IMG/VR virus record: IMGVR_UViG_3300024350_000252
Location: 62,001-126,000 of that record
DNA: 64,000 nt
Direction: 5' to 3' (one strand)
Part shown: piece after piece, positions 7,156 through 45,317 of the stretch
Layout of the letters: each line of letters starts with the position of its first letter
Numbering within the stretch: position 1 is the stretch's first letter
The notes under the pieces: generated by a model
Seen by the model: only the letters and a program-made list of their open reading frames with translations
Databases searched by the model: none
What the model was told of the DNA's origin: nothing
Translations under genes and position numbers: made by a program

Positions 7156-7203
7156 TGATCAGCCATAAATGATCAGTTTGGTATTTGCCAGCCCTAAATG
7201 GCA
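7156..7203 (+). promoter_or_regulatory. Tandem RNA hairpins with matching 8-nt loops abutting the polymerase RBS (putative translational operator)
   Basis: TGATCA-GCCATAAA-TGATCA (7156-7175) and TGCCA-GCCCTAAA-TGGCA (7186-7203); AGGAG at 7205-7209. Confidence 0.7.
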
Positions 7204-7214
7204 TAGGAGAATTG

Positions 7215-9887
7215 ATGAGTTACGTTGACGCTTTGTACAGCAGAGATTCTGATCTTGTAAGTATCGTAGAACGAGATAAAGAAGGTCGCAGACAATATAA
7301 AGAATTTCCTGCTAGATATATTTTCTATTATCCAGATACTAGAGGCAAGTATACCAGTGTGTACGGTGACACACTAAACAGAGTTACTTGTAAGAACCTC
7401 AAAGAATTCCACAAAGAAATAAAGATACACGGTAGCCAACGGCTATTTGAATCCGACATCAATCCTATATTCCGATGCCTAGAAGAAAATTATCTAGGAC
7501 AAGATGCTCCAAAATTGAATGTAGCATTTTTCGACATCGAAGTCGATTTCGATCCTGAACGCGGTTACGCATCGCCTGAAGATGCTTTCATGCCTATCAC
7601 TTCTATCGCTATACATCTACAATGGTTAGATACACTAGTCTGTTTGGCTGTGCCTCCAAAAACGATGTCTATGGCCGAAGCTACAGAAGCTGTTAAAGAA
7701 TTCCCTAATACATATCTCTTCGAAACTGAAGCGGAGATGTTAGACAACTTTCTAACTCTTATTGAAGACGCAGACGTTATCAGTGGTTGGAACAGCGAAG
7801 GATATGATATTCCCTATACTGTTAATCGTGTTACCAAAGCATTAAGCAAAGAAGATACTCGCAGATTCTGCCTTTGGGATCAGTTTCCCAAAAAGCGCGA
7901 ATATGAAAAGTTTGGTAAGACCGCAGTTACATACGACTTCATCGGTCGTGTACATCTAGACAGTCTAGAACTTTATAGAAAATATACCTACGAAGAACGC
8001 CACACCTATAGATTAGATGCTATCGGTGAGATGGAAATCGGAGAAAACAAAACTGTCTATGAAGGCACACTAGATCAATTGTATAACAACGACTTCCGTA
8101 AGTTTATCGAATACAATAGACAAGACTGTGCGTTGTTAGATAAACTTGATAAAAAACTAAAATTTATCGATCTAGCCAATCAGATCGCACATGAAAATAC
8201 TGTGTTGCTACAGACCACTATGGGTGCTGTAGCTGTTACTGAACAGGCTATTATTAACGAAGCACACCGCAGAGGCATGATCGTGCCCAACAGAGCCAAT
8301 AGAGATTCACACGGCGATACACAGGCTGCTGGTGCGTATGTAGCATATCCAAAGAAGGGTATAGCAGAATGGATTGGATCAGTTGACATTAACTCACTGT
8401 ATCCGTCTGCTATTCGTGCTCTAAACATGGGTCCAGAAACAGTGATAGGACAGTTGCGTCCAGATTATACCAAAGCCTATATTGACGAGCAGATGGTACG
8501 TCACGGTAAGTCATTTGCCGCAGCTTGGGAAGGACTTTTCGGAACATTAGAATACGAATTTGTAATGGATCGAAATGTCGCTAAAGAAATCACTATCGAC
8601 TGGGAAAAGGGCGGCAGTGACACGCTCTCAGGAGCCCAAATTAATGATCTCATATTTGATAGCAACCAACCGTGGATGTTGTCAGCTAATGGTACTATCT
8701 TTACATATGAAAAAGAAGGTGTAATACCAGGTCTGCTAAAACGCTGGTATGCTGAACGTAAAGAACTACAGGCCAAATTAAAAGAAAGTATTGCCGCAGG
8801 TAATAAGATTGAAGAAGAATACTGGGACAAACGACAGCTGGTCAAGAAGATTAACTTGAATAGTTTGTATGGTGCTATTCTTAACGTTGGCTGTAGATTC
8901 TTTGATCCGCGCATAGGACAATCTACTACACTCAGTGGTCGTACTATCGTGAAACATATGGCTAGTAAGATCAACGAAATTATTACAGGTGAATATGACT
9001 ACAAGGGCAAAGCTATCATCTACGGCGACACCGACTCTTGTTATTTTTCCGCATACAATGTTCTCAAGAAAGAAATCGAATCTGGTCAGATTCCTTGGAC
9101 TAAAGAAACTGTAATACAGCTATATGATCAGATAGCAGAAGAAACTAATCTTAGCTTTGCTAAGATGATGAACGAAAAATTCCATTGTCCAAAGACACGC
9201 GGCGAAGTCATACGTGCTGGTCGTGAAATCGTAGCATCAAAAGGATTGTTTATTACCAAGAAACGTTATGCTGTTCTTTATTACGACAAGGAAGGCAAAC
9301 GATCTGATGTTGACGGCAAGCCTGGCAAGATCAAAGCTATGGGGCTGGATCTTAAGCGTTCAGATACTCCTGTAATCATTCAGAACTTTCTAAGCGAAGT
9401 ATTAGAAAAAGTTCTTAAAGGTACTGACAGAGATGAAATCCTAAACTTTATCACGGAGTTTAGGACTGAGTTTAAATTAAGACCTGGTTGGGAGAAAGGA
9501 TCGCCCAAGCGAGCCAATAACATAACAGAATATCAAGCCAAAGAAAAGAAAGCAGGCAAAGCTAATATGCCAGGACATGTGCGAGCCAGTATCAATTGGA
9601 ATACTCTCAAACGCATGTATGGTGACAAGTATTCTATGAATATCACCGATGGTGCCAAAGTTATTGTGTGTAAGTTAAAAGAAAATCCCATGGGATATAC
9701 TTCTGTAGCTTATCCGGTAGACGAACTTAGACTACCATCGTGGTTCAAAGAATTACCATTCAATGACGGTGAGATGGAAAATGCCGTCATAGATGAAAAA
9801 CTAGAAAATTTGATCGGTGTGCTAGAGTGGGACATCAGTCAGACTAGAAGCGATAACACCTTTAACTCGCTTTTTGATTTTGAATAA
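7215..9887 (+). CDS. Family B DNA polymerase (T4 gp43-like)
   Basis: Exo motifs FDIE, WNSEGYD, YNRQD; Pol motifs DINSLYPS, KxxLNSLYG, YGDTDS; start moved to ATG 7215 behind AGGAG. Confidence 0.97.
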   Translation: MSYVDALYSRDSDLVSIVERDKEGRRQYKEFPARYIFYYPDTRGKYTSVYGDTLNRVTCKNLKEFHKEIKIHGSQRLFESDINPIFRCLEENYLGQDAPKLNVAFFDIEVDFDPERGYASPEDAFMPITSIAIHLQWLDTLVCLAVPPKTMSMAEATEAVKEFPNTYLFETEAEMLDNFLTLIEDADVISGWNSEGYDIPYTVNRVTKALSKEDTRRFCLWDQFPKKREYEKFGKTAVTYDFIGRVHLDSLELYRKYTYEERHTYRLDAIGEMEIGENKTVYEGTLDQLYNNDFRKFIEYNRQDCALLDKLDKKLKFIDLANQIAHENTVLLQTTMGAVAVTEQAIINEAHRRGMIVPNRANRDSHGDTQAAGAYVAYPKKGIAEWIGSVDINSLYPSAIRALNMGPETVIGQLRPDYTKAYIDEQMVRHGKSFAAAWEGLFGTLEYEFVMDRNVAKEITIDWEKGGSDTLSGAQINDLIFDSNQPWMLSANGTIFTYEKEGVIPGLLKRWYAERKELQAKLKESIAAGNKIEEEYWDKRQLVKKINLNSLYGAILNVGCRFFDPRIGQSTTLSGRTIVKHMASKINEIITGEYDYKGKAIIYGDTDSCYFSAYNVLKKEIESGQIPWTKETVIQLYDQIAEETNLSFAKMMNEKFHCPKTRGEVIRAGREIVASKGLFITKKRYAVLYYDKEGKRSDVDGKPGKIKAMGLDLKRSDTPVIIQNFLSEVLEKVLKGTDRDEILNFITEFRTEFKLRPGWEKGSPKRANNITEYQAKEKKAGKANMPGHVRASINWNTLKRMYGDKYSMNITDGAKVIVCKLKENPMGYTSVAYPVDELRLPSWFKELPFNDGEMENAVIDEKLENLIGVLEWDISQTRSDNTFNSLFDFE

Positions 9888-9946: not shown

Positions 9947-10684
9947 ATGAAGGACATTTTACAAGACATCGTAAGCCATACACAGAACCTAGGATTCCTA
10001 ACTACTGTTAAGGTTACGGGCACAGAAGAAAGCACAACTTTCTTTTCTATGGCAGAAGATCGTTCAGTGATCATGGATGCCAATACACACAATCCATATC
10101 CTGATATGATTGGTACTTTTGGTATGCCTCAACTACAAAAGTTGAAGTATCTGCTAGATGGATCAGAATACAAAGAAGATGCTAAGATCAATATTTTCAA
10201 AGCAGAACGCAACGGCGAGACCCTGCCAGTAGGCATCCACTTTGAAAATAAAGATGGCGACTTCAAGAACGACTATCGTTTTATGAGCATGGAAGCTGTA
10301 AACGAAAAGCTAAAGAATGTTAAGTTCCGTGGCGTTGCTTGGCACGTAGAATTAGAACCCAGTGTGGCAGCAGTGGCTCGTTTCAATTTCCAAGCAGGTG
10401 CTCATAGCGAACATCCAACATTCTTGGCCAAGACAGAAAACAACAATCTAAAGTTTATCTTCGGTGATGCTAGCACACACGGTGGTGAATTTGTTTTTGC
10501 TACCGATGTCGTAGGTACGTTGAACAAGGGTTGGACTTGGCCAGTGTTGCCAGTACTAAGCATCTTGAAGATTGCTGATGTTAATAATACCAAGATGAAA
10601 CTTTCCAACGAAGGTGCTATCGAAATCACACTAGACAGCGGGTTGACTACTTACAGGTATATCATTCCAGCACAGGCGTCTTGA
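9947..10684 (+). CDS. Probable DNA polymerase sliding clamp (gp45-like)
   Basis: 245 aa alpha/beta pattern typical of clamps, ending in a beta-strand ...YRYIIPA; directly downstream of the polymerase. Confidence 0.6.
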   Translation: MKDILQDIVSHTQNLGFLTTVKVTGTEESTTFFSMAEDRSVIMDANTHNPYPDMIGTFGMPQLQKLKYLLDGSEYKEDAKINIFKAERNGETLPVGIHFENKDGDFKNDYRFMSMEAVNEKLKNVKFRGVAWHVELEPSVAAVARFNFQAGAHSEHPTFLAKTENNNLKFIFGDASTHGGEFVFATDVVGTLNKGWTWPVLPVLSILKIADVNNTKMKLSNEGAIEITLDSGLTTYRYIIPAQAS

Positions 10685-11176: not shown

Positions 11177-12700
11177 ATGAACCCACCAGTCAACTTAACA
11201 CCTTTACAAAAAGATTACGCAGTATATCTGCCAGCTATCAGCTGTTTCTTTAGCACGTATATCAGTAAACAACGTTTCGAACAATTCGTTCCCGACGATC
11301 GTATTCCACAAGGTTTCGATCGTGGTATCGAAGGTATGAACTTTCTTAATCCTGAACAAGGGTACTTTACTTACAAGTATGGTCTTTATTCCGCAGGACA
11401 TGCTACACTAGATCTTAACAAGACTATGACCATGGATGCGATGATCCAAGATCGCGATCGTGCTAACACTGTTATCGTTGGAGATTCCGGTGGATATCAG
11501 ATTGGTAAAGGTGTTCTTAAGTTTGACTGGCAGAACTTTGAAGGCAAGGCTGCTAATGATGTTCGTGATAAGATCCTTAATTGGCTAGAGCTAACTGCTG
11601 ATTGGTCTATGTTGCTAGACGTTCCGACATGGGCTTGTGATCATATACACAGTCCAAAGACAGGTCTTAAGAGCTTCCAAGACTGTTTAGATAAAACTCT
11701 ACATAATAACGATTACTTTATCCGTAATCGACTAGGACAAACTAAGTTTCTAAACGTGTTACAAGGCAGCGACTGGGAAACAGCCGATGCTTGGTATCAG
11801 GCTGTCAAACATCTTCCTACCGAAGGTTGGGCGATGGGTGGTAAGAACATGTGCGACATGGAAATCGCACTTAAACGTCTTATCATATTGCGAGATGAAA
11901 AGCTGTTAGACGATCGTAATTGGATGCACTTCTTGGGTACAGCCCAATTAGATTGGTCTTGCTATTTGACTTCTATTCAAAGACAGATTAGGAAGAACGT
12001 AAATGAAAACTTTACCATATCTTTTGATTGCGCATCACCGTTTATCGCAACAGCACACGGGCTCGTCTACACAAACGCACAGCACACAAACAAACGCTGG
12101 TCAGTTATCATGGACAAAGCCCCAGACAACAAAGCCCTTAGCCAGGCTTTTCATGTCCCGTTCCCCTTCGAATCAGAAATAGGACGCAGGCTGTCAATCG
12201 GAGACATCTGCTGGTACAAACCAGGTATGTTAAACAAAGTCGGCAAAGAAGGCAAGACAAGCTGGGACAGCTTTGGTTATGCGCTTATGATGGCACATAA
12301 CACATATTGCCATATCGTTGCTGTACAACGTGCTAACAATCTCATGGATATCGAAACTAAGAAGATACAGCCTGATTGGAAACTATGGCGTAAGGTCAAA
12401 GAAAACGATATGAGCGATGAATACTCTGATTGGGTTCCTCGCAATATCCTGTATTTTGATAGATTTGTCGAAGAGTTATTCAAATCAGAAACTCCGATGC
12501 AGATGATCGAACAGGCAAGACCTATGCTCAATGACATGATGGGTATGAGATTGAAAGGTGGTGTTGCTAAGAACACATACAATTCGCTGTTTGAAGAAGA
12601 TCAAAAAACAGGAACAGTAGAAGACTTCATGGATCCAAATGATGAAGCACTTTTGGAATTAGAAGAACTCTATCACGAGCAGGAGGCTCAGCATGTATGA
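11177..12700 (+). CDS. tRNA-guanine transglycosylase-fold protein (DpdA/TGT-like base-exchange enzyme)
   Basis: GDSGGYQIG, LDVP, NVLQG, WAMGG, HFLG, SFDCASP motifs follow the TGT barrel order; context with folE, queD-like and queE. Confidence 0.8.
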   Translation: MNPPVNLTPLQKDYAVYLPAISCFFSTYISKQRFEQFVPDDRIPQGFDRGIEGMNFLNPEQGYFTYKYGLYSAGHATLDLNKTMTMDAMIQDRDRANTVIVGDSGGYQIGKGVLKFDWQNFEGKAANDVRDKILNWLELTADWSMLLDVPTWACDHIHSPKTGLKSFQDCLDKTLHNNDYFIRNRLGQTKFLNVLQGSDWETADAWYQAVKHLPTEGWAMGGKNMCDMEIALKRLIILRDEKLLDDRNWMHFLGTAQLDWSCYLTSIQRQIRKNVNENFTISFDCASPFIATAHGLVYTNAQHTNKRWSVIMDKAPDNKALSQAFHVPFPFESEIGRRLSIGDICWYKPGMLNKVGKEGKTSWDSFGYALMMAHNTYCHIVAVQRANNLMDIETKKIQPDWKLWRKVKENDMSDEYSDWVPRNILYFDRFVEELFKSETPMQMIEQARPMLNDMMGMRLKGGVAKNTYNSLFEEDQKTGTVEDFMDPNDEALLELEELYHEQEAQHV

Positions 12701-12908
12701 GAATCGAATCAAGCACTTACAAGAAGTACATCAACACCTAGATAACCAAATCGATAAAATGGAGCGAAATGGTAATTTCAAAGATGAAGAACTAGCTGCT
12801 TTGAAAAAGAAAAGGTTGTTTTTTAGAGACGAAATTGCTAAACTAGAACGTAAGCAATGGGAACACGATCACGATACATTGGAACACTGGGATGACGAAG
12901 AAAGATAA
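12693..12908 (+). CDS. DUF465/YdcH-like coiled-coil protein
   Basis: L...H..LD.QI...E......EE...LKKKRL..RDEI pattern. Confidence 0.7.
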   Translation: MYENRIKHLQEVHQHLDNQIDKMERNGNFKDEELAALKKKRLFFRDEIAKLERKQWEHDHDTLEHWDDEER

Positions 12909-13122
12909 ACCAATTCCTCCGGCACAATTTGCTCTCAATAGGACTCAAGTCGAAAAACTATCTAAAATGGCCGCGCACTTCAAAGAAGTAGAATGGTTTA
13001 CCTTAGAGGAAAGCCATAGTAGCGGTATCGGTCCTACTGTCGTAGTTAAATTCAATCTGTTCAACGATAACGACAAAGATAACGACACTACCGTCGATAT
13101 CACTGACGTTTCAACTTGGTGA
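12892..13122 (+). CDS. Hypothetical protein
   Basis: ORF track; overlapping operon-style packing. Confidence 0.75.
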   Translation: MTKKDKPIPPAQFALNRTQVEKLSKMAAHFKEVEWFTLEESHSSGIGPTVVVKFNLFNDNDKDNDTTVDITDVSTW

Positions 13123-13125
13123 AAT

Positions 13126-13671
13126 ATGAAAAGAGATTATTCATCTGGACAAGCAGACGACGCTGTATTTTTCACAGGTATTGAAGTAGAAAAAACTCCT
13201 GCCTTTGGATTAAAGACTTTATTCGTTGTAGGAGTACAGCCTACTAGCAAAATTCATGCGGCAGCAGTAGCATATGGCTGTGAACATATCTATTTTGGCG
13301 CTAATCAAAGTTTTCCTAAGCTACAAGTCAACGACGGTGACGGATGGCGTCCATGGGAAGATATGATCCAAACAATGTTACGAAGTGGTCTTAGAGACGG
13401 ACATCAATACCTATGTACTTTAGATCTTGATGTTAGTTGCGTAGAAGGTCTTCTTGAATCTGCGTGTTGCGAATATACAAATTTCATTCCGCAGATATCT
13501 GTAAAGATCCCCTATCTACAACAATTAGGCTATAATGCCACAATTAAAATCGACGATAGAGATTTTAATGCTACTAATCACGGAGTGTGGTGCCATAACC
13601 TCCATGACCTACTGGGAAGAGATCGCTTCACTAGTTGGACCGAATATGGTAAAGATGAGATTATAAAGTAA
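13126..13671 (+). CDS. Hypothetical enzyme-like protein within the deazaguanine cluster
   Basis: alpha/beta pattern with motifs such as FTGxEVExT, HIYFGANQS and KIDDxDF. Confidence 0.8.
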   Translation: MKRDYSSGQADDAVFFTGIEVEKTPAFGLKTLFVVGVQPTSKIHAAAVAYGCEHIYFGANQSFPKLQVNDGDGWRPWEDMIQTMLRSGLRDGHQYLCTLDLDVSCVEGLLESACCEYTNFIPQISVKIPYLQQLGYNATIKIDDRDFNATNHGVWCHNLHDLLGRDRFTSWTEYGKDEIIK

Positions 13672-14000
13672 TGGCAACTGGACAATATGCTGTCGAAACA
13701 ACAGCAAAAACACAAAGGCAAGTAATGAAACGATCTTTTAAACAAAAATTTCGATCTTGGTTATTCGACGAAGAAAGTTCTCAACCAATAGCTTCTCTCG
13801 GAATGGTCGAAGAAGCTAAACTACAATCAGAAGGTATGCGACTACAAATCTACAAGGCATCTGGCGGTTATGTAGTTGAAACTAGAAGCTATGATCGTTT
13901 AAAGGATCGTAGCGGTTGTAAGATGTTCGTTATCAAAGAAGAAGACGACCTAGGCACAGAACTAGGAAAGATCGTCATGATGGAGGCATTAAGAGGATGA
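13671..14000 (+). CDS. Hypothetical protein
   Basis: TAATG coupling. Confidence 0.75.
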   Translation: MATGQYAVETTAKTQRQVMKRSFKQKFRSWLFDEESSQPIASLGMVEEAKLQSEGMRLQIYKASGGYVVETRSYDRLKDRSGCKMFVIKEEDDLGTELGKIVMMEALRG

Positions 14001-14392
14001 ATATTCGGCAGGACGTCCGCCCTAACAAAATGATTTGGGTCACTTTTCGCAAAGAAGGTATTCATAAATATCCAGCAGCCTTGGAAGATCCAAGTCTAGC
14101 TACTGGAGATGAATATGACGTATCGTTTTTGGGTTACCCTCATCGCCACATCTTTCATTTCAGGGTGTGGATCAATGTGCTCCACAATGATAGGGACATC
14201 GAGTTCATCCAATTCAAACGATGGCTCGAGTCGCTGTATAATGGTCAAGGTGCCGTTCTAAGCCTTGACTACAAGAGTTGTGAGATGATGAGCGATGATT
14301 TACACGCTCAGATTATCGCAAAGTACCCAGGCCGCGAGGTTTGGATTGAGATCTCCGAAGACGGAGAAAATGGTTCATTCATCAAATATTAA
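13997..14392 (+). CDS. queD: QueD-like 6-carboxytetrahydropterin synthase (T-fold, phage variant)
   Basis: HRHIFH metal-binding motif, DRDIEFI, SCE and terminal V.I.EDGENG strand; context. Confidence 0.65.
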   Translation: MNIRQDVRPNKMIWVTFRKEGIHKYPAALEDPSLATGDEYDVSFLGYPHRHIFHFRVWINVLHNDRDIEFIQFKRWLESLYNGQGAVLSLDYKSCEMMSDDLHAQIIAKYPGREVWIEISEDGENGSFIKY

Positions 14393-14406
14393 AACAAGAG
14401 GCTATA

Positions 14407-14673
14407 ATGTCTAAGAACTACAAGGAATATAAGTATTTCGCCAATCGCCCAGATGTCGTCAAGATTTTTGATGACTTAGATGCTTATCTCGACTTTTGTC
14501 GATTTGAGCTTCGTCCTTATAATCCTGCTGATCTTTATAGAAAAGACAGCGAACACTATAGGGCATTTCTAAACTCTCAACGCCATAGCAATGGTGGTTA
14601 TCATAATAACCACAATCATCAACGTAGAGATTTTAGACACAACAATAAGCCAAGAAACTTCACAAGACAATGA
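14407..14673 (+). CDS. Hypothetical protein with low-complexity His/Asn/Arg tail
   Basis: ORF track; AGAGG RBS. Confidence 0.75.
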   Translation: MSKNYKEYKYFANRPDVVKIFDDLDAYLDFCRFELRPYNPADLYRKDSEHYRAFLNSQRHSNGGYHNNHNHQRRDFRHNNKPRNFTRQ

Positions 14674-15761
14674 CAGTATTTTTAGTTGATTTAGAAGCTG
14701 TCGAGACCAGGTACACGGGACAATGGAAGGCTCATGTACCTGAGCTCTTACGAAAAAGGGTACAAAATGTTCAAATTATCGATGGCCCTACGGATATTCC
14801 TGCTGCCACTACGCCTGGTGCTTTTCTCAATTTTGGTGGCACCAATGTATATAAGTCTAGTCAAGTTGAGAAGATTAGCAGACTATTTTGCGCCGGATCA
14901 GTGGGCCCTGGTGATCATTTTATTTTTACAGATGCGTGGCATCCTGGGATCATTAACATCAAATACATGAGTGAGTTACTTGGCATTCCTGTCAAGATAC
15001 ACGCTCTATGGCATGCTGGTAGTTATGATCCTCAGGACTTCTTAGGGCGTCTTATTGGTAACGCAGGTTGGGTAAGACATGCCGAAAAGAGTTTTTTCCA
15101 CGCGATTGATCACAATTATTTTGCTACAGAATTTCATATCAAGATGTTCGATGACAATCTCTTGAATGATGAGATTTTTGAAAATCCATGGAGGCATGAG
15201 GATCTAAAAAATTATCGTGATGATGGTAAGATAATTCGATCTGGTTGGCCTATGGAGTATATGCCAGACACTTTGATCATGTACAAAAACATGCCAAAGA
15301 AAAATGTCATTCTTTTCCCACATCGACTTGCTCCAGAAAAGCAATTAGACATATTCATGGACTTGAAGAAGCATCTTCCTCAATACGAATTCCGTGTATG
15401 TCAAGAATATCCATTGACCAAGAATGAATATCACAATATGCTGGGCGAAGCTAAACTAGTGTTTAGTGCTAATTTACAAGAAACCTTAGGCATAAGTTGG
15501 TACGAAGGCGCACTAGTAGATGCTATTCCAATGGTGCCTGATAGACTCAGCTATAGCGAAATGGCATTAGATACATTTAAGTATCCGAGCAAATGGACAG
15601 AGTCTTTCGAATCGTACGACATCCATAGAAAAGAAGTCTGCCATAAGATTATCCAGTACATGGAAAATTACGAAAAATTCTTACCTAGCCTAAATAAACA
15701 AGTAGATATGTTAACTAAAGACTTCTTCAGTTGCGATAACTTGCTGAAGATGTTAAAATAA
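14670..15761 (+). CDS. GT-B fold glycosyltransferase (GT4-like)
   Basis: HRLAPEK acceptor/donor motif and E-x7-E (ETLGISWYE); two Rossmann-like halves. Confidence 0.85.
   Translation: MTVFLVDLEAVETRYTGQWKAHVPELLRKRVQNVQIIDGPTDIPAATTPGAFLNFGGTNVYKSSQVEKISRLFCAGSVGPGDHFIFTDAWHPGIINIKYMSELLGIPVKIHALWHAGSYDPQDFLGRLIGNAGWVRHAEKSFFHAIDHNYFATEFHIKMFDDNLLNDEIFENPWRHEDLKNYRDDGKIIRSGWPMEYMPDTLIMYKNMPKKNVILFPHRLAPEKQLDIFMDLKKHLPQYEFRVCQEYPLTKNEYHNMLGEAKLVFSANLQETLGISWYEGALVDAIPMVPDRLSYSEMALDTFKYPSKWTESFESYDIHRKEVCHKIIQYMENYEKFLPSLNKQVDMLTKDFFSCDNLLKMLK
15731..15759 (+). promoter_or_regulatory. sigma70-type promoter TTGCGA-N17-TAAAAT with extended -10 TG
   Basis: Overlaps the 3' end of the GT gene; upstream of the 15799/folE block. 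Confidence 0.55.
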
Positions 15762-15798
15762 TACATATGTCATCCACGACACAAACTCGGAGAAAAAA

Positions 15799-16197
15799 AT
15801 GTTAAAGTTTAAAACAATAGAAGATATAACTTCTACTAAAGAAGAATATGATCGATTATACAATATGGATCATATTTTTGTAATTAGAAGCAAGAAACCC
15901 GATGACAACGATTTAACTAAAGCACTGTCGATATTCGAAAGAGACAACTTTGACTGGACTTCAACCCTCAGAGGTCCGTACAAAGGTCAACCAAAAATCA
16001 CAAACGAATTAAATTATCAAGATTATGCTCACGGTTACGTGTTTGAAGTTAGTGATGATAAGTTAATTAATTTCGAAAGAAAAGCATTCATGCTTATTAT
16101 GACAACAGATTTTATCGTTGAAAAATTAGATATAGTAAGATCTAAAAAAGAAGCATCAGACGAAATGTTTTACTCCCTATTTGAGGAACAAGAATAA
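15799..16197 (+). CDS. Hypothetical protein
   Basis: GGAG RBS; TAATG-coupled to folE. Confidence 0.75.
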   Translation: MLKFKTIEDITSTKEEYDRLYNMDHIFVIRSKKPDDNDLTKALSIFERDNFDWTSTLRGPYKGQPKITNELNYQDYAHGYVFEVSDDKLINFERKAFMLIMTTDFIVEKLDIVRSKKEASDEMFYSLFEEQE

Positions 16198-17033
16198 TGA
16201 CAAAAGAATTTACACCAGATCCTGTTATTAACGCAGAACTCAATAGAGAATTTATTAAGCAAGAATACGAACCTTTAGGTAAACCTGTGTTCATCAAGAA
16301 AGAAACAGGGTTAGATGCTATGAACGGCGACGGCGGATATGAACTAGCTAAACTAAGTGATCATTTACGTTTTAAAATGAAACGTGAAAACAAAAGATTC
16401 TGGGCCGGCGATAACATTAGCGATTTCCTAAGCGACGGTGATAAAGAAAAACTTATCGACGAAGCAACTCTAGCATTTGAAAAAGTCTTAGATGTCTTGT
16501 TGATCGATCGCGAAAACGATCCCAATAGTAAAGGCACAGCTCGTCGCCTTGCTAAGATGTACTTTAACGAAATAATGGCAGGAAGATATGACCCAGCACC
16601 AGACGCAACAGCATTTCCCAATGATTCGCAGGACCGTTACGAAGGTATGCTTGTTGTTCGCAGTGAGCTTCGCAGTATGTGTAGCCATCATCATCAACCC
16701 GTTACTGGCGTTGCTTATATTGGCATTATTGCCGCCGAGAAACTTATCGGACTCAGCAAGTACACACGTATCGCACAATGGTGTGCCCGTCGAGGTACTC
16801 TCCAGGAGGAACTGGCTAATGATATTGCTCGGGAGATCGAACGTGCCACAGGCGCCAAAGACCTAGGCGTTTATATTCAAGCCACTCATGGTTGCTGTGA
16901 GAATCGTGGCATCATGGCACACTCTAGTCTAACACAGACTACTGTACTAAAGGGTGCGTTTAAAGATGATCCGGGTACAAAGAAAGAGTTTATGGACAAT
17001 ATTAAACTTCAACAAGAGTTCGCTCCACGATAA
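16197..17033 (+). CDS. folE: GTP cyclohydrolase I with N-terminal extension
   Basis: TARRLAKMY, SMCSHH, IGLSKYTR, RRGTLQEEL, HGCCENRG motifs. Confidence 0.96.
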   Translation: MTKEFTPDPVINAELNREFIKQEYEPLGKPVFIKKETGLDAMNGDGGYELAKLSDHLRFKMKRENKRFWAGDNISDFLSDGDKEKLIDEATLAFEKVLDVLLIDRENDPNSKGTARRLAKMYFNEIMAGRYDPAPDATAFPNDSQDRYEGMLVVRSELRSMCSHHHQPVTGVAYIGIIAAEKLIGLSKYTRIAQWCARRGTLQEELANDIAREIERATGAKDLGVYIQATHGCCENRGIMAHSSLTQTTVLKGAFKDDPGTKKEFMDNIKLQQEFAPR

Positions 17034-17044
17034 AGGATAAAACA

Positions 17045-17524
17045 ATGAAGTGGTTTTTAAACTTCCTAGAACGCATTGGTCGTAAACGTATCATCCTCGA
17101 TAGAGAATCTAACGAACCATATCTCGAAAGATATTATGTCTTTCTCAAAGATAGGTCTTGGTTTCCCTTCAATGTGTTCTTACACAAATTCTTAAAGTCA
17201 GATCCCGACGATGTACACGATCATCCTTGGCCGTATGCCACTCTCATCCTTAAAGGCGGATACTACGAGTGGGTTCCTAAATTTAACGGCAACGGAGAAA
17301 TGATCGGACAGGTCCGTCATTGGCGTGGCCCTGGTCATTTTCGTGTATGTAATCCCACTTCTTATCATCGTATCGAACTTAAAGAAGGTGTTACAGCATG
17401 GACGTTGTTTATGCCTGGACCACATCGTAGGGAGTGGGGATTCCTTGTTAAAGGTAAGGAATGGATACAACATGAACAATATATTGAACAAAGGAAAAAG
17501 TTAAATGTACAAACGAACGGTTAG
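17045..17524 (+). CDS. Cupin-fold (RmlC-like) protein
   Basis: HDHPW...GGYYE...YHRIEL...WTLF metal-binding cupin pattern. Confidence 0.75.
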   Translation: MKWFLNFLERIGRKRIILDRESNEPYLERYYVFLKDRSWFPFNVFLHKFLKSDPDDVHDHPWPYATLILKGGYYEWVPKFNGNGEMIGQVRHWRGPGHFRVCNPTSYHRIELKEGVTAWTLFMPGPHRREWGFLVKGKEWIQHEQYIEQRKKLNVQTNG

Positions 17525-18002
17525 TTGGTACGATTTACAAAAAACAGTTAATAAAATTTGTCGGGACGTCACATTAACAGGTTGGCGTCCTGATTATGTT
17601 GTAGGCATCACACGTGGTGGATTGCTACCAGCTGTAATGATCAGTCATTATTTCGATATACCCTGTAACACATTAAAAGTCTGTCTTAGAGACAACGAAG
17701 AAACAGAAAGCAATCTGTGGATGGCTGAAGATGCATTTGCTGGTAAGAAAATTCTTGTCGTCGATGACATCAATGATTCAGGTGCCACCATTAATTGGTT
17801 ATTAAAAGATTGGCCTAGTGGATGTTTTCCAAATGATCCCAAATGGGAAAGTATATGGGGAGATAATGTTCGCTTTGCCGTCCTGTTCGATAACTTAGCT
17901 TCTAAAGCACAAGTATCCGCAGACTACGTCGGTGAAGAAATCAATAAAGCCGAAGACGATTGTTGGATAGACTTTCCTTATGAAGATTGGTGGACAAAAT
18001 GA
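17505..18002 (+). CDS. Type I phosphoribosyltransferase (Gpt/Hpt-like)
   Basis: GITRGG and PRPP-binding ILVVDDINDSGAT motif; C-terminal WIDFPYE. Confidence 0.9.
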   Translation: MYKRTVSWYDLQKTVNKICRDVTLTGWRPDYVVGITRGGLLPAVMISHYFDIPCNTLKVCLRDNEETESNLWMAEDAFAGKKILVVDDINDSGATINWLLKDWPSGCFPNDPKWESIWGDNVRFAVLFDNLASKAQVSADYVGEEINKAEDDCWIDFPYEDWWTK

Positions 18003-18229
18003 TAGACGAAAAAGTAAAATTACATTGTACAGACAACGGCAAAGACCTCGATGGACATATTCTGTCTTACAAGCCTAAAGCATATCTAGAAGTAGCTGTA
18101 CAAACATTAAAGATTCGTATGGCGTATCAAGAACGCACTAAGGTATTTGTAGGCAGCGTAGGCGGAAAAGAATTCGTTCTAAAAGAATCCAATCTGCCTA
18201 CCGAACGCAAGGAGTTTAGTAGAAAATGA
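17999..18229 (+). CDS. Hypothetical protein
   Basis: ATGA coupling at 17999. Confidence 0.75.
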   Translation: MIDEKVKLHCTDNGKDLDGHILSYKPKAYLEVAVQTLKIRMAYQERTKVFVGSVGGKEFVLKESNLPTERKEFSRK

Positions 18230-18615
18230 GCAACGAAGCACACACATTAAGCGATGCCAAAGCAGAAGGTGTAGCACCATGGGATGATCTTGTAGAAGAA
18301 GATTTCCATGTTGCTGTTTTTAAAGATAGATATCCTGTCACAGAAGGACATCTTTTGTTTGTACCGCAATATGATGCTGACGGCATCATAGCCGATGCGT
18401 TCCGAGATGCTTTACGCAAAGGTAGAGAAATGATGGCTAATAACGAATGCGATGGATTCAACATCGGAATCAATGTTGGTAAAGCAGCAGGCCAAACAGT
18501 AATGTATCCGCATGTACATCTCATTCCTAGAAGAAATGGCGATATGGCCGATCCTAGAGGCGGTGTACGTCATGTTATTCCTGAAAAAGGTAATTACAAG
18601 AAGGAGACTGTATGA
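18226..18615 (+). CDS. HIT-family nucleotide hydrolase
   Basis: YPVTEGHLL, GFNIGIN.G.AAGQTV and HVHLIPR (HxHxh) motifs. Confidence 0.9.
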   Translation: MSNEAHTLSDAKAEGVAPWDDLVEEDFHVAVFKDRYPVTEGHLLFVPQYDADGIIADAFRDALRKGREMMANNECDGFNIGINVGKAAGQTVMYPHVHLIPRRNGDMADPRGGVRHVIPEKGNYKKETV

Positions 18616-18824
18616 CAAATAAAATCAAAGAAGGTAGTAAATGGCGTGCCGGGGATAAAACATTCCATGTATTGAGTGTTGTCGAAATAAACAATAATAT
18701 TTGGGTACACTATATCGAAGATACAAAACTGTCATTAAACGGCGACAAACTGCCAGGCGAAAAGGAGTACAGTTGTTTTGCTGAAAGCTTCGTCAGTAGG
18801 TTCACACCCTTTGAAAACTATTAA
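18612..18824 (+). CDS. Hypothetical protein
   Basis: ATGA coupling. Confidence 0.7.
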   Translation: MTNKIKEGSKWRAGDKTFHVLSVVEINNNIWVHYIEDTKLSLNGDKLPGEKEYSCFAESFVSRFTPFENY

Positions 18825-19011
18825 GATTCCGTGGTCTTCTAAACTCGACAACATACCAAAATGGGATGAAGTGAGTATCAAGATCGTACAAACATTTGGT
18901 TTACCAGGACACAAGTATCGTTGCGAAATGAGTACCGAGGCTATGATATATCATTTTGAAAACGAACAAGATTGCTTTTTATGTAAACTGATGGTGAGTG
19001 AATATCTATGA
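18811..19011 (+). CDS. Hypothetical protein (start TTG 18811, or 18778 as in track)
   Basis: ORF track; fills gap. Confidence 0.6.
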   Translation: MKTIKIPWSSKLDNIPKWDEVSIKIVQTFGLPGHKYRCEMSTEAMIYHFENEQDCFLCKLMVSEYL

Positions 19012-19826
19012 GCATAGCATTATTCTTAGGCGATAGTCATACCTGTGGGTATGTAACAGTGCCAGGACAACAAGGGCCTGGAACATATACCATGTGGAAC
19101 AATAACAATTATGCCGAATCATATGCTAGACAAAATAACAAAAAAACTGTTATCTATGCTGTGCCTGGAAGTTGTAATAGAGTCTACCCCGATTGGTTAA
19201 GATCTATGTTGGACAAATATCCAGATATAGATGAAGTATATGTATTGTTAGCTTATTGGAATAGATTTGTTTTAGGGTTCAATGAAACCCTATCTCCTTC
19301 TGTTTTGCCAGCTGATTATTTTACTACACACGTAATGAACAAAGACAATTTAATAGATATCTATCAAGATGTACTGTTCAAAGAAGATCGATTCCAACTA
19401 TACAATAAACCCACTTATGAAGATTTTTCAAGCGGAGCATCTGTTAGTTTTAACTATCAAAATGCTTTAGTTGATCCGGATCTAAGAAAAGACAGCTTTA
19501 TGAAAGTCAAATTATTCTTTGATCTAAATACACACCTAGAACAAAGAGATTTTTTTAAAGATGTATACACAATGGATAATATGTGCCATGATAGGAATTG
19601 TCGTTTATTTTTCTTTAACATGACTGATCGCATGAAGTTTCCTGATTCATTTGATTTTTATGGAAAGCTAAAAGCTACAACAGTAGCACCAATGTCTGTA
19701 GAATCGTATTTTAAAAGCAAATTCATAGATCATAAAAAATATTACATAGAAGACGGTGAGCATTACAATCAAGAATATCACGACCTTATTGCGAGCAGAT
19801 TTATTCCATGGCTAAAGACTCAGTAA
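19008..19826 (+). CDS. SGNH/GDSL-like hydrolase or acyltransferase
   Basis: FLGDSH nucleophile block, PG..N block, C-terminal DGEH (DxxH). Confidence 0.65.
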   Translation: MSIALFLGDSHTCGYVTVPGQQGPGTYTMWNNNNYAESYARQNNKKTVIYAVPGSCNRVYPDWLRSMLDKYPDIDEVYVLLAYWNRFVLGFNETLSPSVLPADYFTTHVMNKDNLIDIYQDVLFKEDRFQLYNKPTYEDFSSGASVSFNYQNALVDPDLRKDSFMKVKLFFDLNTHLEQRDFFKDVYTMDNMCHDRNCRLFFFNMTDRMKFPDSFDFYGKLKATTVAPMSVESYFKSKFIDHKKYYIEDGEHYNQEYHDLIASRFIPWLKTQ

Positions 19827-20407
19827 AAATCCTAATCGCCGGAGATAGTTTTGCTGCTAAATGGCCTGGCAAAGGTTGGCCTGATCTGTTATCTGAATAT
19901 ATCAATGTGACTAATCTAGCACAAGCCGGTGTAGGCGAATACAAGATTCTAGAACAGATAAAATCAGCAAATCTACAAGATTATTCTGCTGTAATCGTTT
20001 GCCATACCAGTCCTAGTAGAGTACATACCAGATCACATCCTATTCATAAAACAGGGCTACATGAAAATTGTGATTTGATATGGACTGATATCGAATCTCA
20101 TAAAGATTATTTCAATAGTAGTTTGAAAGCAGCTAAAGGATATTTCCAACATCATTACGATGATCAATATTACAAAGACATTTACAGCTTGATTAGGAAA
20201 GAAATATCTAATATAATAGATATACCATACATATCTGTAGATAATCTAAAAGCTAGCACAGAGTTTAAGTTTGAAACAAATTCAATAGACTTTAGCGACT
20301 ACTGGTTAGAAAATAGAGGAAATACAAACCATTTTAACGAACAAGGAAACAGTTACGTATGTCAGACATTACTAACGAAACTAAAAAGCATTGGACTATC
20401 ACTTTAG
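19808..20407 (+). CDS. SGNH/GDSL-like protein, second paralog
   Basis: IAGDSF, NLAQAGVG, C-terminal NHFNEQGN. Confidence 0.65.
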   Translation: MAKDSVKILIAGDSFAAKWPGKGWPDLLSEYINVTNLAQAGVGEYKILEQIKSANLQDYSAVIVCHTSPSRVHTRSHPIHKTGLHENCDLIWTDIESHKDYFNSSLKAAKGYFQHHYDDQYYKDIYSLIRKEISNIIDIPYISVDNLKASTEFKFETNSIDFSDYWLENRGNTNHFNEQGNSYVCQTLLTKLKSIGLSL

Positions 20408-20571
20408 AAGAAGATCCCGAAACTGGCGAATTGGTAATGCCATTGCCTGACGATGCTCTACAGCAAGCAGGATTTAAAGAAGGCGATATTTTAGTTTGGA
20501 AAGATCTTGGTAACGGATCATTTGAACTAAGAAAAAAGGTTGACAATCAAGATACAAAGGATGTAAAATAA
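20359..20571 (+). CDS. AbrB/MazE-like small DNA-binding protein
   Basis: GELVMPLP...AGFKEGDILVW swapped-hairpin pattern. Confidence 0.55.
   Translation: MSDITNETKKHWTITLEEDPETGELVMPLPDDALQQAGFKEGDILVWKDLGNGSFELRKKVDNQDTKDVK
20540..20569 (+). promoter_or_regulatory. sigma70-type promoter TTGACA-N18-TAAAAT upstream of queE
   Basis: Consensus -35 at 20540-20545 and -10 at 20564-20569. Confidence 0.6.
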
Positions 20572-20575
20572 AACA

Positions 20576-21424
20576 ATGAGCAAAATCAAGATAGCAGAAC
20601 TATTTTATTCAATTCAAGGCGAAGGACGCTATATGGGTGTACCTTCGGTCTTCTTGCGTACTTTTGGTTGTAACTTTAAGTGCGCAGGCTTTGGTATGCC
20701 TAAAGGAGAACTCAGCAATGAAGCAGATAATATTGACCCATCTCTTTACACCGAGTACAAATCGCTTCCTTTGGTGTCTACAGGTTGTGATAGTTACGCT
20801 AGTTGGGATCCTCGCTTTAAGCATCTTTCTCCCGTTTTGGATACTGATGCGATTGCCGATGCTATTGTGGATACGTTACCTTACAAAGAATGGCGCGACG
20901 AACATCTCGTGATTACAGGCGGTGAGCCGTTGCTAGGTTGGCAACGTGCTTACCCAGACTTGCTACGTCATCCTAAGATGGCAGGTCTCAAGGAAATCAC
21001 TTTTGAAACAAATGGCACTCAGCCGCTAACTGAAGAATTCGCAGAGTATTTGTTAGAATGGTTGATGCCTCATCCAGAATATCACAAAGAAATCACATTC
21101 AGTGTCAGTGCTAAACTAAGTTGCTCTGGTGAAGCAAGACATGAAGCTATTCGGCCAGATGTAGTTTGTAACTACGAAACTCTAGGATATACATATCTTA
21201 AATTTGTTGTGGCTACAGAAGAAGACGCAGAAGAAGCTATCGAAACAGTAGACCTTTACAGAGCAGAAGGATTTACAGGACCGGTGTATTTGATGCCTGT
21301 AGGCGGTGTAGAAAGTGTTTATACATTGAATAATCGCCGTGTAGCAGAGCTAGCAATGAAGAACGGTTTACGTTATAGCGACAGATTACAAGTGCCGTTA
21401 TTTAAAAATGAATGGGGTACATAA
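20576..21424 (+). CDS. queE: 7-carboxy-7-deazaguanine synthase (radical SAM)
   Basis: ELFYSIQGEG..GVPSVFLRTFGCNFKC...CDS, VITGGEP, ETNGT, SVSAKL, RLQV motifs. Confidence 0.92.
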   Translation: MSKIKIAELFYSIQGEGRYMGVPSVFLRTFGCNFKCAGFGMPKGELSNEADNIDPSLYTEYKSLPLVSTGCDSYASWDPRFKHLSPVLDTDAIADAIVDTLPYKEWRDEHLVITGGEPLLGWQRAYPDLLRHPKMAGLKEITFETNGTQPLTEEFAEYLLEWLMPHPEYHKEITFSVSAKLSCSGEARHEAIRPDVVCNYETLGYTYLKFVVATEEDAEEAIETVDLYRAEGFTGPVYLMPVGGVESVYTLNNRRVAELAMKNGLRYSDRLQVPLFKNEWGT

Positions 21425-26384: not shown

Positions 26385-26403
26385 CTTTAAGGAGAATATC
26401 TCT

Positions 26404-45310: not shown

Positions 45311-45317
45311 TATTTAT
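45311..45317 (-). promoter_or_regulatory. Putative late promoter (ATAAATA)
   Basis: Only 4 nt before the 45306 ATG. Confidence 0.5.

What the first reader, a model, noticed from the sequence alone, without database searches (positions are those of the whole stretch)
11177..21424. 7-deazaguanine pathway with an embedded GT-B glycosyltransferase and no queC in view: candidate new glycosylated DNA base
Seen: a TGT/DpdA-like gene (11177), a QueD-like gene (13997), folE (16197) and queE (20576) lie in one co-directional region downstream of the DNA polymerase and clamp. A GT4-like glycosyltransferase with an E-x7-E motif (14670) lies between queD and folE. No QueC, QueF or archaeosine-synthase-like gene appears in the window. 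Known: FolE, QueD and QueE convert GTP to 7-carboxy-7-deazaguanine (CDG); phage DpdA enzymes place 7-deazaguanine derivatives in DNA to block restriction; T4 DNA glucosyltransferases are GT-B enzymes that act on DNA bases. Inference: the phage may insert CDG or a derivative and then glycosylate it, a hypermodification not among the deazaguanine DNA bases I know of. Alternatives: the GT acts on another base or on the cell envelope, or the TGT targets tRNA.
Basis: partly seen in the sequence, partly recalled or inferred. Interest (0 to 1): 0.85.

Follow-up and report, generated by a model that had tools for sequence, protein, structure and literature searches.

The report
Deazaguanine DNA module with linked glycosyltransferase
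An uncultured jumbo phage carries the known gene set that replaces guanine in its DNA with 7-deazaguanine, and a sugar-adding enzyme always sits beside that set in several phage lineages, so these phages, including Pseudomonas phage PA5oct, may make a sugar-decorated guanine analogue that nobody has yet described.

Summary
The genes are real and lie at the stated coordinates. One is misnamed. The "QueD-like" gene (13997-14392) carries the DpdL signature LxxxHRHxF, not the QueD signature CxxxHGH. It is homologous to phiST DpdL, the proposed 7-carboxy-7-deazaguanine (CDG) decarboxylase.

The missing queC is therefore expected. FolE/QueD/QueE/DpdL plus a DpdA3-type transglycosylase, without QueC, is the pathway published in 2023 for 2'-deoxy-7-deazaguanosine (dDG). 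No true QueD lies in the window.

The 518-aa protein has a TGT fold with both catalytic aspartates. The glycosyltransferase (GT) is a GT-B/GT4 enzyme with an intact EX7E motif.

What looks new is the linkage.
- All 17 cultured-phage records with a GT homologue have DpdL within about 3 kb.
- All 58 GT-seeded metagenomic loci with enough flank also carry DpdL, at a median gap of about 200 bp.
- At least six gene orders occur, and the GT usually abuts DpdL or the transglycosylase.
- phiST, with proven plain dDG, has no GT.

PA5oct shares the module and has a chemically unidentified modified G. I found no paper that links a GT to this pathway.

Best reading: a dDG-type module whose GT adds a sugar to the deazaguanine. 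The sugar step is inferred and the acceptor is unknown. LC-MS of PA5oct, ACP17 or BUDD DNA would settle it.

The parts
7185..9887 (+). Family B DNA polymerase (context, upstream of the module)
   Evidence: PF00136 1.9e-35 and PF03104 9.3e-18. It is 49% identical to the PA5oct-type PolB.
9947..10684 (+). Sliding-clamp-like protein (context)
   Evidence: phrog_12062, E 2.2e-33. It is 36% identical to the gene annotated as PCNA in phage PAC2.
11177..12700 (+). DpdA-like guanine transglycosylase: TGT fold, distant relative of DpdA3, with a C-terminal helical extension. The ORF opens at 11144; the likely start is Met12 at 11177.
   Evidence: AlphaFold pLDDT 88.3. Foldseek top 18 hits are TGT, QTRT1 and DpdA. 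D114, S115, G117 and D295 are invariant. hhalign to the ACP17 DpdA gives 95.6%, E 1.3e-8. There is no Pfam hit.
13126..13671 (+). Conserved 181-aa protein of unknown function that travels with the module
   Evidence: Present in 73 of 81 related loci. It has 46 invariant residues. It is homologous to the ACP17 ORF just upstream of DpdA3 (hhalign 98.5%). A PA5oct homologue lies about 27 kb from the module. No Pfam or PDB match.
13671..14000 (+). 109-aa ORF whose ends overlap those of its two neighbours; function unknown
   Evidence: ORF overlaps. Present in 35 related loci.
13997..14392 (+). DpdL, the proposed 7-carboxy-7-deazaguanine decarboxylase.
   Evidence: LxxxHRHxF motif with H23, H49 and H51 invariant. 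Motif definition is in PMC10516641. hhalign to phiST CGPG_00067 gives 99.1%, E 1.3e-18. It is 54% identical to the ACP17 DpdL. There is no match to phiST QueD.
14407..14673 (+). Small basic protein (88 aa, pI 9.6) whose stop overlaps the GT start
   Evidence: ORF overlap. Present in 48 related loci. pI.
14670..15761 (+). GT-B / GT4-type glycosyltransferase with an EX7E motif, the conserved partner of DpdL and DpdA
   Evidence: Foldseek PDB hits are PglA, BshA, MshA and Gtf3. The best BFVD hit is the ACP17 GT, E 1.5e-20. E271, E279, R219, E223 and K224 are invariant across six lineages. Atlas neighbours are GT1/GT4 clusters.
15799..16197 (+). 132-aa ORF found only in contigs identical to the window; probably not part of the system
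   Evidence: Present only in the 100%-identical loci.
16197..17033 (+). GTP cyclohydrolase I (FolE) with an N-terminal extension of about 90 aa
   Evidence: PF01227 1.2e-38. NF006824 2.2e-38. CSHHH zinc motif.
17045..17524 (+). Cupin-type metalloprotein (HDH...H), function unknown
   Evidence: phrog_4786, E 4.3e-36. H47, H58, D59, H60 and H108 are invariant. Only weak cupin_2 PDB matches. Present in 39 related loci.
17505..18002 (+). Purine phosphoribosyltransferase, xanthine/guanine type
   Evidence: PF00156 5.2e-13. NF006613 1.9e-13. PRPP motif VVDDINDSG. A PRTase also sits between DpdL and QueE in PA5oct-type phages.
18226..18615 (+). HIT-family nucleotide hydrolase/transferase
   Evidence: PF01230 7.8e-11. 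HinT-like, 6.5e-13. Present in 31 related loci.
20576..21424 (+). QueE-like radical SAM enzyme (CDG synthase)
   Evidence: phrog_2076, E 6.3e-54. Partial matches to five QueE NCBIfam models, all below their cut-offs.

Best explanation
The region is a DpdL-type 7-deazaguanine DNA-modification module of an uncultured jumbo phage (source contig about 238 kb) that is distantly related to Pseudomonas phage PA5oct.

Proposed pathway:
1. FolE converts GTP to dihydroneopterin triphosphate.
2. A QueD that is not in this window makes CPH4.
3. QueE makes 7-carboxy-7-deazaguanine (CDG).
4. DpdL removes the carboxyl group to give 7-deazaguanine.
5. The TGT-fold DpdA-like enzyme swaps this base for guanine in phage DNA.

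No QueC is needed in this route. The conserved GT4 glycosyltransferase is a dedicated member of the module. It most likely transfers a sugar from a nucleotide-sugar to the deazaguanine, either on DNA after insertion or on the free base before insertion. The result would be a sugar-bearing deazaguanine that hinders restriction. The purine PRTase may recycle the guanine released by base exchange back towards GTP.

Status of each step:
- Shown here: gene identities, folds, catalytic motifs and the linkage of the GT to DpdL and DpdA.
- Taken from the literature: dDG chemistry in phiST, and a modified G in PA5oct.
- Inferred: that the GT acts on the deazaguanine, which atom it modifies, which sugar it uses, and the PRTase role.
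For: Module identity:
- DpdL signature and homology.
- TGT fold with both catalytic aspartates and relatedness to the ACP17 DpdA.
- FolE and QueE.
- No QueC in the window.
- PMC10516641 reports DpdL in phages that have DpdA, FolE, QueD and QueE but no QueC, and about 100% dDG in phiST.

GT belongs to the module:
- All 17 phage records with a GT homologue are among the 28 records with DpdL, and the two genes lie within about 3 kb of each other.
- Gene orders differ between lineages. PA5oct type: DpdA-GT-DpdL. ACP17: DpdA3-GT-DpdL-QueE with overlapping or abutting ends. BUDD: GT-TGT-DpdL-QueE. BCSR5: GT-DpdA. Phosso: DpdL-GT.
- In the window clade, the GT is present in every related locus that extends far enough.
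- In GT-seeded IMG/VR loci, 58 of 58 with at least 1.5 kb on both flanks carry DpdL, at a median gap of about 200 bp.

GT is probably active: the GT4 catalytic residues are invariant across lineages at 25-50% identity.

A nucleotide-sugar donor is likely: lineage-specific sugar-nucleotide genes sit beside the GT. These are a UDP-glucose/GDP-mannose dehydrogenase-like gene in 5 loci and an NAD-epimerase fragment in PAC2.

Experimental context:
- PA5oct DNA resists five restriction enzymes and is attacked by sensors of hypermodified DNA. The base was not identified (PMC12191111).
- dpdA plus dpdL of ACP17 alone gave no dDG in E. coli, and the authors suggested that further enzymes may be needed.
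Against: - 7-deazaguanine has no obvious hydroxyl or amine handle at C7. A sugar would have to go on N2, on O6, or on C7 as a C-glycoside. None of these is known for a GT4 enzyme.
- phiST makes plain dDG without any GT, so the GT is not needed for base synthesis or insertion.
- Seven distinct DpdL phages lack the GT, including one whose DpdL is 57% identical to the window's.
- The nearest solved GT structures act on small molecules or proteins. No T4-type DNA glucosyltransferase is among the top hits.
- The GT is acidic in all lineages, pI 5.4-6.0.
- The GT model has only moderate confidence, pLDDT 70.9.
- DpdL's decarboxylase activity has never been shown biochemically.
- The co-occurrence counts are not phylogenetically independent. 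The 84 GT-seeded loci fall into 5 clusters at 50% identity.
Confidence: 0.5

Rival explanations
1. The final DNA base is plain dDG, as in phiST. The GT acts elsewhere in the pathway: on a small-molecule intermediate, as a transient carrier or protecting group, or as a helper of DpdL or DpdA. No sugar remains on the DNA.
For: The closest solved structures (BshA, MshA) glycosylate small molecules. The GT is most tightly linked to DpdL, which acts on the free base; the median gap is about 200 bp. The GT is acidic. dDG has no obvious handle for a sugar.
Against: phiST makes about 100% dDG with no GT, so no such helper is needed in principle. PA5oct is restricted by sensors of hypermodified DNA, although these also recognise modifications without a sugar.
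Confidence: 0.25
2. One reading: CDG itself, or a carboxy derivative, is inserted into DNA and then glycosylated. The DpdL-like protein would then not be a decarboxylase in these phages.
For: DpdL activity is only predicted, and heterologous tests failed. A carboxylate is a possible acceptor for an acyl-glycoside. No QueC is in the window.
Against: The window protein is a clear DpdL homologue with the same motif as the phiST protein that correlates with dDG. Acyl-glycosides are labile. GT4 enzymes are not known to form them.
Confidence: 0.1
3. The GT has nothing to do with DNA. It would modify the host envelope, a phage or host protein, or another DNA base such as hmC or hmU. It would sit in the cluster only through shared early expression.
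For: GT4 enzymes usually build envelope glycans. Jumbo phages carry many GTs for surface polysaccharides (PMC7824862).
Against: Linkage to DpdL and DpdA is perfect across at least six different gene orders and 25-50% sequence identity. No GT homologue was found outside a DpdL context among the loci examined. No hmC or hmU pathway gene is in the window, only ThyX.
Confidence: 0.08
4. The TGT-fold enzyme modifies tRNA rather than DNA.
For: The best structural matches are tRNA-guanine transglycosylases.
Against: The family is phage-specific, sits among replication genes and is related to the ACP17 DpdA. DpdL-carrying phages have the base in DNA. PA5oct DNA itself is restriction-resistant.
Confidence: 0.03

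Closest known systems
Cellulophaga phage phiST dDG system (DpdA3 + DpdL + FolE/QueD/QueE, no QueC; Cui, Hutinet et al., NAR 2023, PMC10516641)
   Same: Same pathway logic. DpdL has the same LxxxHRHxF motif (hhalign 99.1%). Both have FolE and QueE, both lack QueC, both use a TGT-fold inserter, and both clusters lie next to the DNA polymerase.
   Different: phiST has no GT, no o13126-type protein, no PRTase, no cupin and no HIT. Its DpdA3 is 259 aa and only weakly related to the 518-aa window enzyme (hhalign 60.7%).
Deazaguanine system of Pseudomonas phage PA5oct (Wroclawvirus), which has an unidentified modified G
   Same: Syntenic module: PolB, clamp, DpdA-like (42% identity), GT (40%), DpdL (54%), PRTase, QueE, RNase H. 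The true QueD lies far from the module in PA5oct (gp230 versus QueE gp162).
   Different: Gene order differs: DpdA-GT-DpdL there, DpdA...DpdL-x-GT here. No FolE homologue was found in the 31.6-kb PAC2 locus examined. PA5oct has an SDR epimerase fragment where the window has a cupin. The system was noted before (PMC7824862; PMC12191111), but the GT was not discussed and the base is not identified.
T4 alpha- and beta-glucosyltransferases (DNA 5-hmC glucosylation)
   Same: They are GT-B enzymes encoded by a phage, and they decorate an already modified DNA base with a sugar to block restriction. This is the proposed analogy for how the window GT works.
   Different: No detectable structural or sequence relationship beyond the GT-B fold; they are absent from the top 50 Foldseek hits. 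Their acceptor is a hydroxymethyl pyrimidine, not a deazapurine.
tRNA-queuosine mannosyltransferase QTMAN/GTDC1 (GT4)
   Same: It is a GT4 enzyme that glycosylates a 7-deazaguanine derivative in a nucleic acid. A QTMAN-family cluster is among the structural neighbours of a close homologue of the window GT (TM 0.74).
   Different: The similarity is no greater than to many other GT4 families (TM 0.71-0.80). QTMAN's acceptor is the cyclopentenediol of queuosine, which these phages cannot make.
Bacterial Dpd system (DpdA/DpdB/DpdC; dPreQ0 and dADG)
   Same: It uses a TGT-fold DNA transglycosylase. DpdA 7ui4 is among the fold hits.
   Different: It needs QueC-derived preQ0 and the DpdB ATPase. The window protein is not recognised by the Pfam DpdA or TGT models.

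Membership tests
DpdL (proposed CDG decarboxylase) | Signature LxxxHRHxF in place of the QueD signature CxxxHGH | tested here: met
   L45-G-Y-P-H49-R-H51-I-F53. H49 and H51 are invariant in 12 homologues.
DpdL (proposed CDG decarboxylase) | Homology to the founding members (phiST CGPG_00067 and the ACP17 DpdL) | tested here: met
   hhalign 99.1%, E 1.3e-18 to phiST. 54% identity, E 1e-38 to ACP17.
DpdL (proposed CDG decarboxylase) | Genome context: DpdA, FolE, QueD and QueE present, QueC absent | tested here: inconclusive
   DpdA-like, FolE and QueE are present and no QueC is in the window. QueD is not in the 64-kb window, and the rest of the roughly 238-kb genome could not be read.
DpdL (proposed CDG decarboxylase) | Decarboxylates CDG to 7-deazaguanine | not testable with these tools
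   The activity is unproven even for the founding members.
QueD / PTPS (CPH4 synthase) | Catalytic Cys in the CxxxHGH motif | tested here: not met
   Leu stands at the Cys position. There is no profile match to phiST QueD. No PDB QueD or PTPS hit was found with a family profile.
TGT / DpdA transglycosylase superfamily | TGT-type barrel fold | tested here: met
   The model has pLDDT 88.3. The top 18 Foldseek hits are TGT, QTRT1 and DpdA with probability 1.0.
TGT / DpdA transglycosylase superfamily | Two catalytic aspartates (DSGG motif and the nucleophile in xFDC/SYD) | tested here: met
   D114 and D295 are invariant in 35 homologues at 27-52% identity. They align with DSGG and SYDS of the ACP17 DpdA. 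Mapping onto Z. mobilis D102 and D280 rests on my own knowledge.
TGT / DpdA transglycosylase superfamily | Recognition by the curated family models (PF01702 TGT, PF23859 DpdA) | tested here: not met
   The window protein has no hit. One of 36 family members reaches E 0.0069 for PF01702.
DpdA3 subfamily | Homology to DpdA3 of phiST or to the dpdA of ACP17 | tested here: inconclusive
   95.6% (E 1.3e-8) to the ACP17 424-aa protein, but only 60.7% (E 8e-5) to phiST DpdA3. It is probably a sister or novel subfamily, with 949 representatives at 50% identity.
DpdA3 subfamily | Exchanges G for a 7-deazaguanine in DNA | not testable with these tools
   Needs nucleoside analysis or an enzyme assay.
GT-B / GT4 retaining glycosyltransferases | GT-B two-Rossmann fold | tested here: met
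   Foldseek hits PglA, BshA, MshA, Gtf3 and SdgB (E 1.6e-4 to 1e-3, probability 1.0). The model is of moderate quality, pLDDT 70.9. Atlas neighbours are GT1/GT4 clusters.
GT-B / GT4 retaining glycosyltransferases | EX7E motif and phosphate-binding R/K | tested here: met
   E271..E279, R219 and K224 are invariant across six lineages.
GT-B / GT4 retaining glycosyltransferases | Match to the Pfam Glycos_transf_1 / Glyco_transf_4 models | tested here: not met
   The window protein has no Pfam, PHROG or NCBIfam hit. Related Atlas clusters carry PF00534 in 29-92% of members.
Phage DNA glucosyltransferases (T4 AGT/BGT type) | Specific structural or sequence similarity to AGT or BGT | tested here: not met
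   Neither appears among the top 50 PDB or BFVD hits.
GTP cyclohydrolase I (FolE) | PF01227 above its gathering score | tested here: met
   132.8 bits against a cut-off of 27.
QueE (CDG synthase) | Match to curated QueE models above their cut-offs | tested here: inconclusive
   phrog_2076 'QueE-like', E 6e-54, over the full length. Five NCBIfam QueE models match only partially, at 41-49 bits against cut-offs of 200-300. The Pfam Radical_SAM score is just below its cut-off.

The most novel reading that the evidence does not exclude
The DpdL-GT-DpdA module makes a sugar-bearing 7-deazaguanine, which would be the first glycosylated purine base in any natural DNA. This would be the unidentified 'modified G' of PA5oct-type Pseudomonas phages. 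It would also occur in a very abundant clade of environmental jumbo phages: each protein family has about 8,000 or more 90%-identity clusters. The attachment might be unusual chemistry, such as N2-, O6- or C-glycosylation. The sugar may differ between lineages, given the lineage-specific sugar-nucleotide genes beside the GT.
Probability: 0.4. Interest if true: 0.9.

Novelty: new variant of a known kind. Interest (0 to 1): 0.68.

Why it matters
Deazaguanine DNA modifications are a major way for phages to escape restriction and CRISPR. Eight derivatives are known, and none carries a sugar.

A glycosyltransferase that is always co-inherited with DpdL and DpdA points either to a ninth, hypermodified member or to a missing biosynthetic step. 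The second possibility could explain why dpdA plus dpdL from ACP17 failed to work in E. coli.

The same module is present in cultured phages that are easy to grow: PA5oct and its relatives, ACP17, BUDD and X1, BCSR5, and Phosso. PA5oct is studied as a therapy candidate, and its modified G is still chemically unidentified. The question is therefore directly testable with existing material.

The families are also very common in metagenomes, so whatever the product is, it is widespread.

Tried and rejected
- Direct nucleotide search of the region against GenBank phages found no match.
- Single-sequence and profile searches against PDB sequences gave nothing meaningful for the DpdA-like protein, the GT, DpdL, o13126 and the cupin. 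Fold-level comparison was needed.
- QueD reading of 13997-14392: rejected on motif and homology.
- I looked for the true QueD.
  - No CxxxHGH ORF or QueD-HMM hit is in the window.
  - A relative (L108) has a real QueD (CRHLHGH) about 6.6 kb downstream of its GT.
  - An exact 36-mer from a related QueD, found in contigs from IMG datasets numbered like those of the window-identical contigs, did not retrieve the window's source contig.
  - Those QueD loci do not overlap the window.
  - QueD therefore remains unlocated for this genome.
- phiST CGPG_00066, the gene between DpdL and DpdA3, is not a GT and is not related to o13126.
- The Phosso 'glycosylase' is unrelated to o13126.
- The PAC2 'epimerase' is an SDR fragment and is not a homologue of the window cupin.
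- No fusions of the GT or DpdL to DpdA-like proteins were found. The long family members only carry insertions.
- Promoter-like and terminator-like sites are no more frequent than in shuffled sequence.
- Isoelectric point as a clue to DNA binding is uninformative, because the DpdA-like enzyme is acidic too.
- All the module genes in the window are intact ORFs.
- One literature search ('DpdL' alone) was wasted on unrelated acronyms.
- The supplementary tables of PMC10516641 are not held.

Full report
WHAT IS THERE

The window comes from a large uncultured phage. Loci 100% identical to it lie on IMG/VR contigs of up to 238 kb. From about 7.2 kb to 23 kb, a run of + strand genes, many with overlapping ends, follows the family B DNA polymerase and a clamp-like gene.

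- FolE (16197-17033) is unambiguous: PF01227, E 1.2e-38.
- The QueE-like radical SAM protein (20576-21424) matches phrog_2076 over its full length, E 6e-54. It matches curated QueE models only partially.
- The other three genes have no Pfam, PHROG or NCBIfam hit and needed deeper tests.

THE TRANSGLYCOSYLASE

I took 35 diverse homologues from an exhaustive search (949 representatives at 50% identity). AlphaFold2 gave a confident model (pLDDT 88.3).
- Its top 18 PDB matches are all tRNA-guanine transglycosylases, human QTRT1 and the DNA preQ0 insertase DpdA (E 8e-8 to 3e-5).
- D114 in GDSGG and D295 in FDC are invariant across the family.
- The family profile aligns with the dpdA gene product of Acidovorax phage ACP17 at 95.6% probability, including both motifs.
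- It aligns only weakly with the 259-aa DpdA3 of phiST, at 60.7%.

I read it as a DpdA-type DNA transglycosylase of a large, unnamed branch near DpdA3.

THE 'QueD' IS DpdL

The 131-aa protein has the three zinc histidines of a T-fold enzyme. It has Leu where QueD has its catalytic Cys, so the motif reads LxxxHRHxF. Cui, Hutinet and colleagues give exactly this signature for DpdL, the proposed CDG decarboxylase (PMC10516641).
- The family profile matches the founding DpdL of phiST at 99.1%, E 1.3e-18.
- It does not match phiST QueD.
- It is 54% identical to the ACP17 DpdL.

That paper reports DpdL in phages that have DpdA, FolE, QueD and QueE but no QueC. It also reports complete replacement of G by 2'-deoxy-7-deazaguanosine (dDG) in phiST.

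So the lack of queC is what a known pathway predicts. I confirmed that lack across the 50 window ORFs scanned with Pfam. The expected base is 7-deazaguanine rather than CDG.

A true QueD is absent from the 64-kb window.
- In PA5oct it lies far from QueE.
- In one relative (L108) it lies about 6.6 kb beyond the GT.
- I could not locate it in this genome.

THE GLYCOSYLTRANSFERASE

The model is only moderately confident (pLDDT 70.9), but it hits GT4 GT-B enzymes: PglA, BshA, MshA and Gtf3. The best viral match is the ACP17 homologue.

The residues that define GT4 catalysis are invariant across six lineages that share only 25-50% identity. These are the EX7E glutamates E271 and E279, plus R219 and K224. 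The enzyme is therefore almost certainly active. No T4-type DNA glucosyltransferase appears among the matches.

THE LINKAGE (THE MAIN RESULT)

In GenBank phages:
- GT homologues occur in 17 records and DpdL homologues in 28.
- All 17 GT records are among the 28, and the two genes lie within about 3 kb of each other.

Gene orders differ between lineages:
- PA5oct type: DpdA-GT-DpdL.
- ACP17: o13126-like, DpdA3, GT, DpdL, QueE, with overlapping or abutting ends.
- BUDD: GT-TGT-DpdL-QueE.
- BCSR5: GT-DpdA.
- Phosso: DpdL-GT, with the DpdA-like gene about 170 kb away.
- The window clade: DpdA, o13126, o13671, DpdL, o14407, GT, FolE.

In metagenomes:
- In 80 IMG/VR loci seeded with the transglycosylase, the GT is present wherever the locus reaches far enough.
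- In 84 loci seeded with diverse GTs, all 58 with at least 1.5 kb on both flanks contain DpdL, at a median gap of about 200 bp.

Caveat: these counts are not independent events. The GTs form 5 clusters at 50% identity. Even so, adjacency that survives repeated rearrangement argues for a functional tie.

The reverse does not hold. phiST and its relatives, RHph_I1_18, Ahp1, Bakedbeans, D479, BUCT-ZZ01 and MA9V-3 have DpdL without this GT. The GT is therefore an add-on and not a requirement for dDG.

OTHER MEMBERS OF THE MODULE

- A well-conserved 181-aa protein (13126-13671) travels with the module. It is homologous to the ORF just upstream of DpdA3 in ACP17 (98.5%) and to a PA5oct gene. It matches nothing known.
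- A cupin with an HDH...H metal site, a xanthine/guanine-type PRTase and a HIT protein lie between FolE and QueE in most relatives.
- A PRTase occupies the same place in PA5oct-type phages.
- I suggest, as an inference only, that the PRTase salvages the guanine released by base exchange.
- Sugar-nucleotide genes beside the GT are lineage-specific. A UDP-glucose/GDP-mannose dehydrogenase-like gene occurs in five loci. An NAD-epimerase fragment occurs in PAC2. This fits a nucleotide-sugar donor that varies between lineages.

LITERATURE

- PA5oct was listed in 2021 as having a deazaguanine synthesis and incorporation system (PMC7824862).
[quoted passage not shown] The base was not identified and the GT was not mentioned (PMC12191111).
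- Cui et al. do not mention a glycosyltransferase. They report that dpdA plus dpdL of ACP17 or phiST gave no dDG in E. coli.
- Searches combining deazaguanine with glycosyl terms found no description of a glycosylated deazaguanine in DNA.
- The library is incomplete, so prior knowledge elsewhere cannot be excluded.

INTERPRETATION

Firmly supported: this is a DpdL-type (dDG-type) deazaguanine DNA-modification module, and the GT is a functional member of it.

Inferred: what the GT does. The reading I favour (about 0.5) is that it puts a sugar on the deazaguanine, on DNA or on the free base, by analogy with T4 glucosylation of hmC.

The main rival (about 0.25) is that it acts on an intermediate and the DNA carries plain dDG.

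Points against the favoured reading:
- 7-deazaguanine has no obvious handle for a sugar.
- The nearest structures act on small molecules.
- The protein is acidic.

VERDICT

This is a known kind of system with an undescribed, tightly linked component. It is a good, directly testable lead rather than a demonstrated new base.

Noticed in passing
window 45317-60142 (-) and 60145-63654 (-): A giant 4941-aa ORF is followed by an 1169-aa ORF on the minus strand, next to tail-like genes (Collar domain at 38643-40463). I did not examine them.
   Followed up: no
window 27068-28495 (-): Twitch-domain radical SAM protein (NF033640, E 4.8e-106, above its cut-off). This is a second radical SAM enzyme besides QueE, and its role is unknown.
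   Followed up: no
window 2702-3025 (+), 3147-4241 (+), 25716-26384 (+), 26362-27081 (+): The window also encodes an A-type Fe-S cluster carrier, an NT5C-like 5'-nucleotidase, ThyX and a Bax1-I family membrane protein. The Fe-S carrier could serve the radical SAM enzymes.
   Followed up: no
window 888-1979 (+): The N-terminal part has a weak cytidylyl/adenylyltransferase-like match (TIGR00125, E 1e-3, below its cut-off). PAC2 also has a 'CTP transf-like' gene upstream of PolB. This could be a source of an activated sugar donor for the GT.
   Followed up: no
window 13126-13671 (+): A strongly conserved 181-aa protein (46 invariant residues) is shared with ACP17 and PA5oct-type phages. It matches no known family or structure and may be a further enzyme of the pathway.
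   Followed up: partly
L015:16676-17152 and 18 other related loci: An ORF between FolE and the cupin has a weak HhH-GPD (base-excision glycosylase) match (PF00730, E 0.005, below its cut-off). It is absent from the window.
   Followed up: no
related loci L024, L025, L029, L049, L055, L064-L066, L073, L074: Relatives fall into two QueE classes, at 70-83% and 35-37% identity to the window QueE. In most loci of the second class the cupin and PRTase are also more divergent, which suggests module swapping within the clade.
   Followed up: no
L086:3885-4379 (Xanthomonas phage BUDD): A PAPS-reductase-family protein (PF01507, E 8e-13) lies between FolE and the GT. From my own knowledge, PAPS reductases and QueC belong to the same ATP-pyrophosphatase superfamily, so this could be a carboxylate-activating enzyme. 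That would mean the chemistry differs in this lineage.
   Followed up: no
P0274, P0289, P0329, P0336, P0365 (DpdA-like representatives of 640-750 aa): Long family members carry insertions of 40-160 residues inside the transglycosylase barrel. They are not fusions to the GT or DpdL.
   Followed up: partly
window 15799-16197 (+): This 132-aa ORF between the GT and FolE occurs only in contigs identical to the window. In five relatives a UDP-glucose dehydrogenase-like gene occupies that position.
   Followed up: partly
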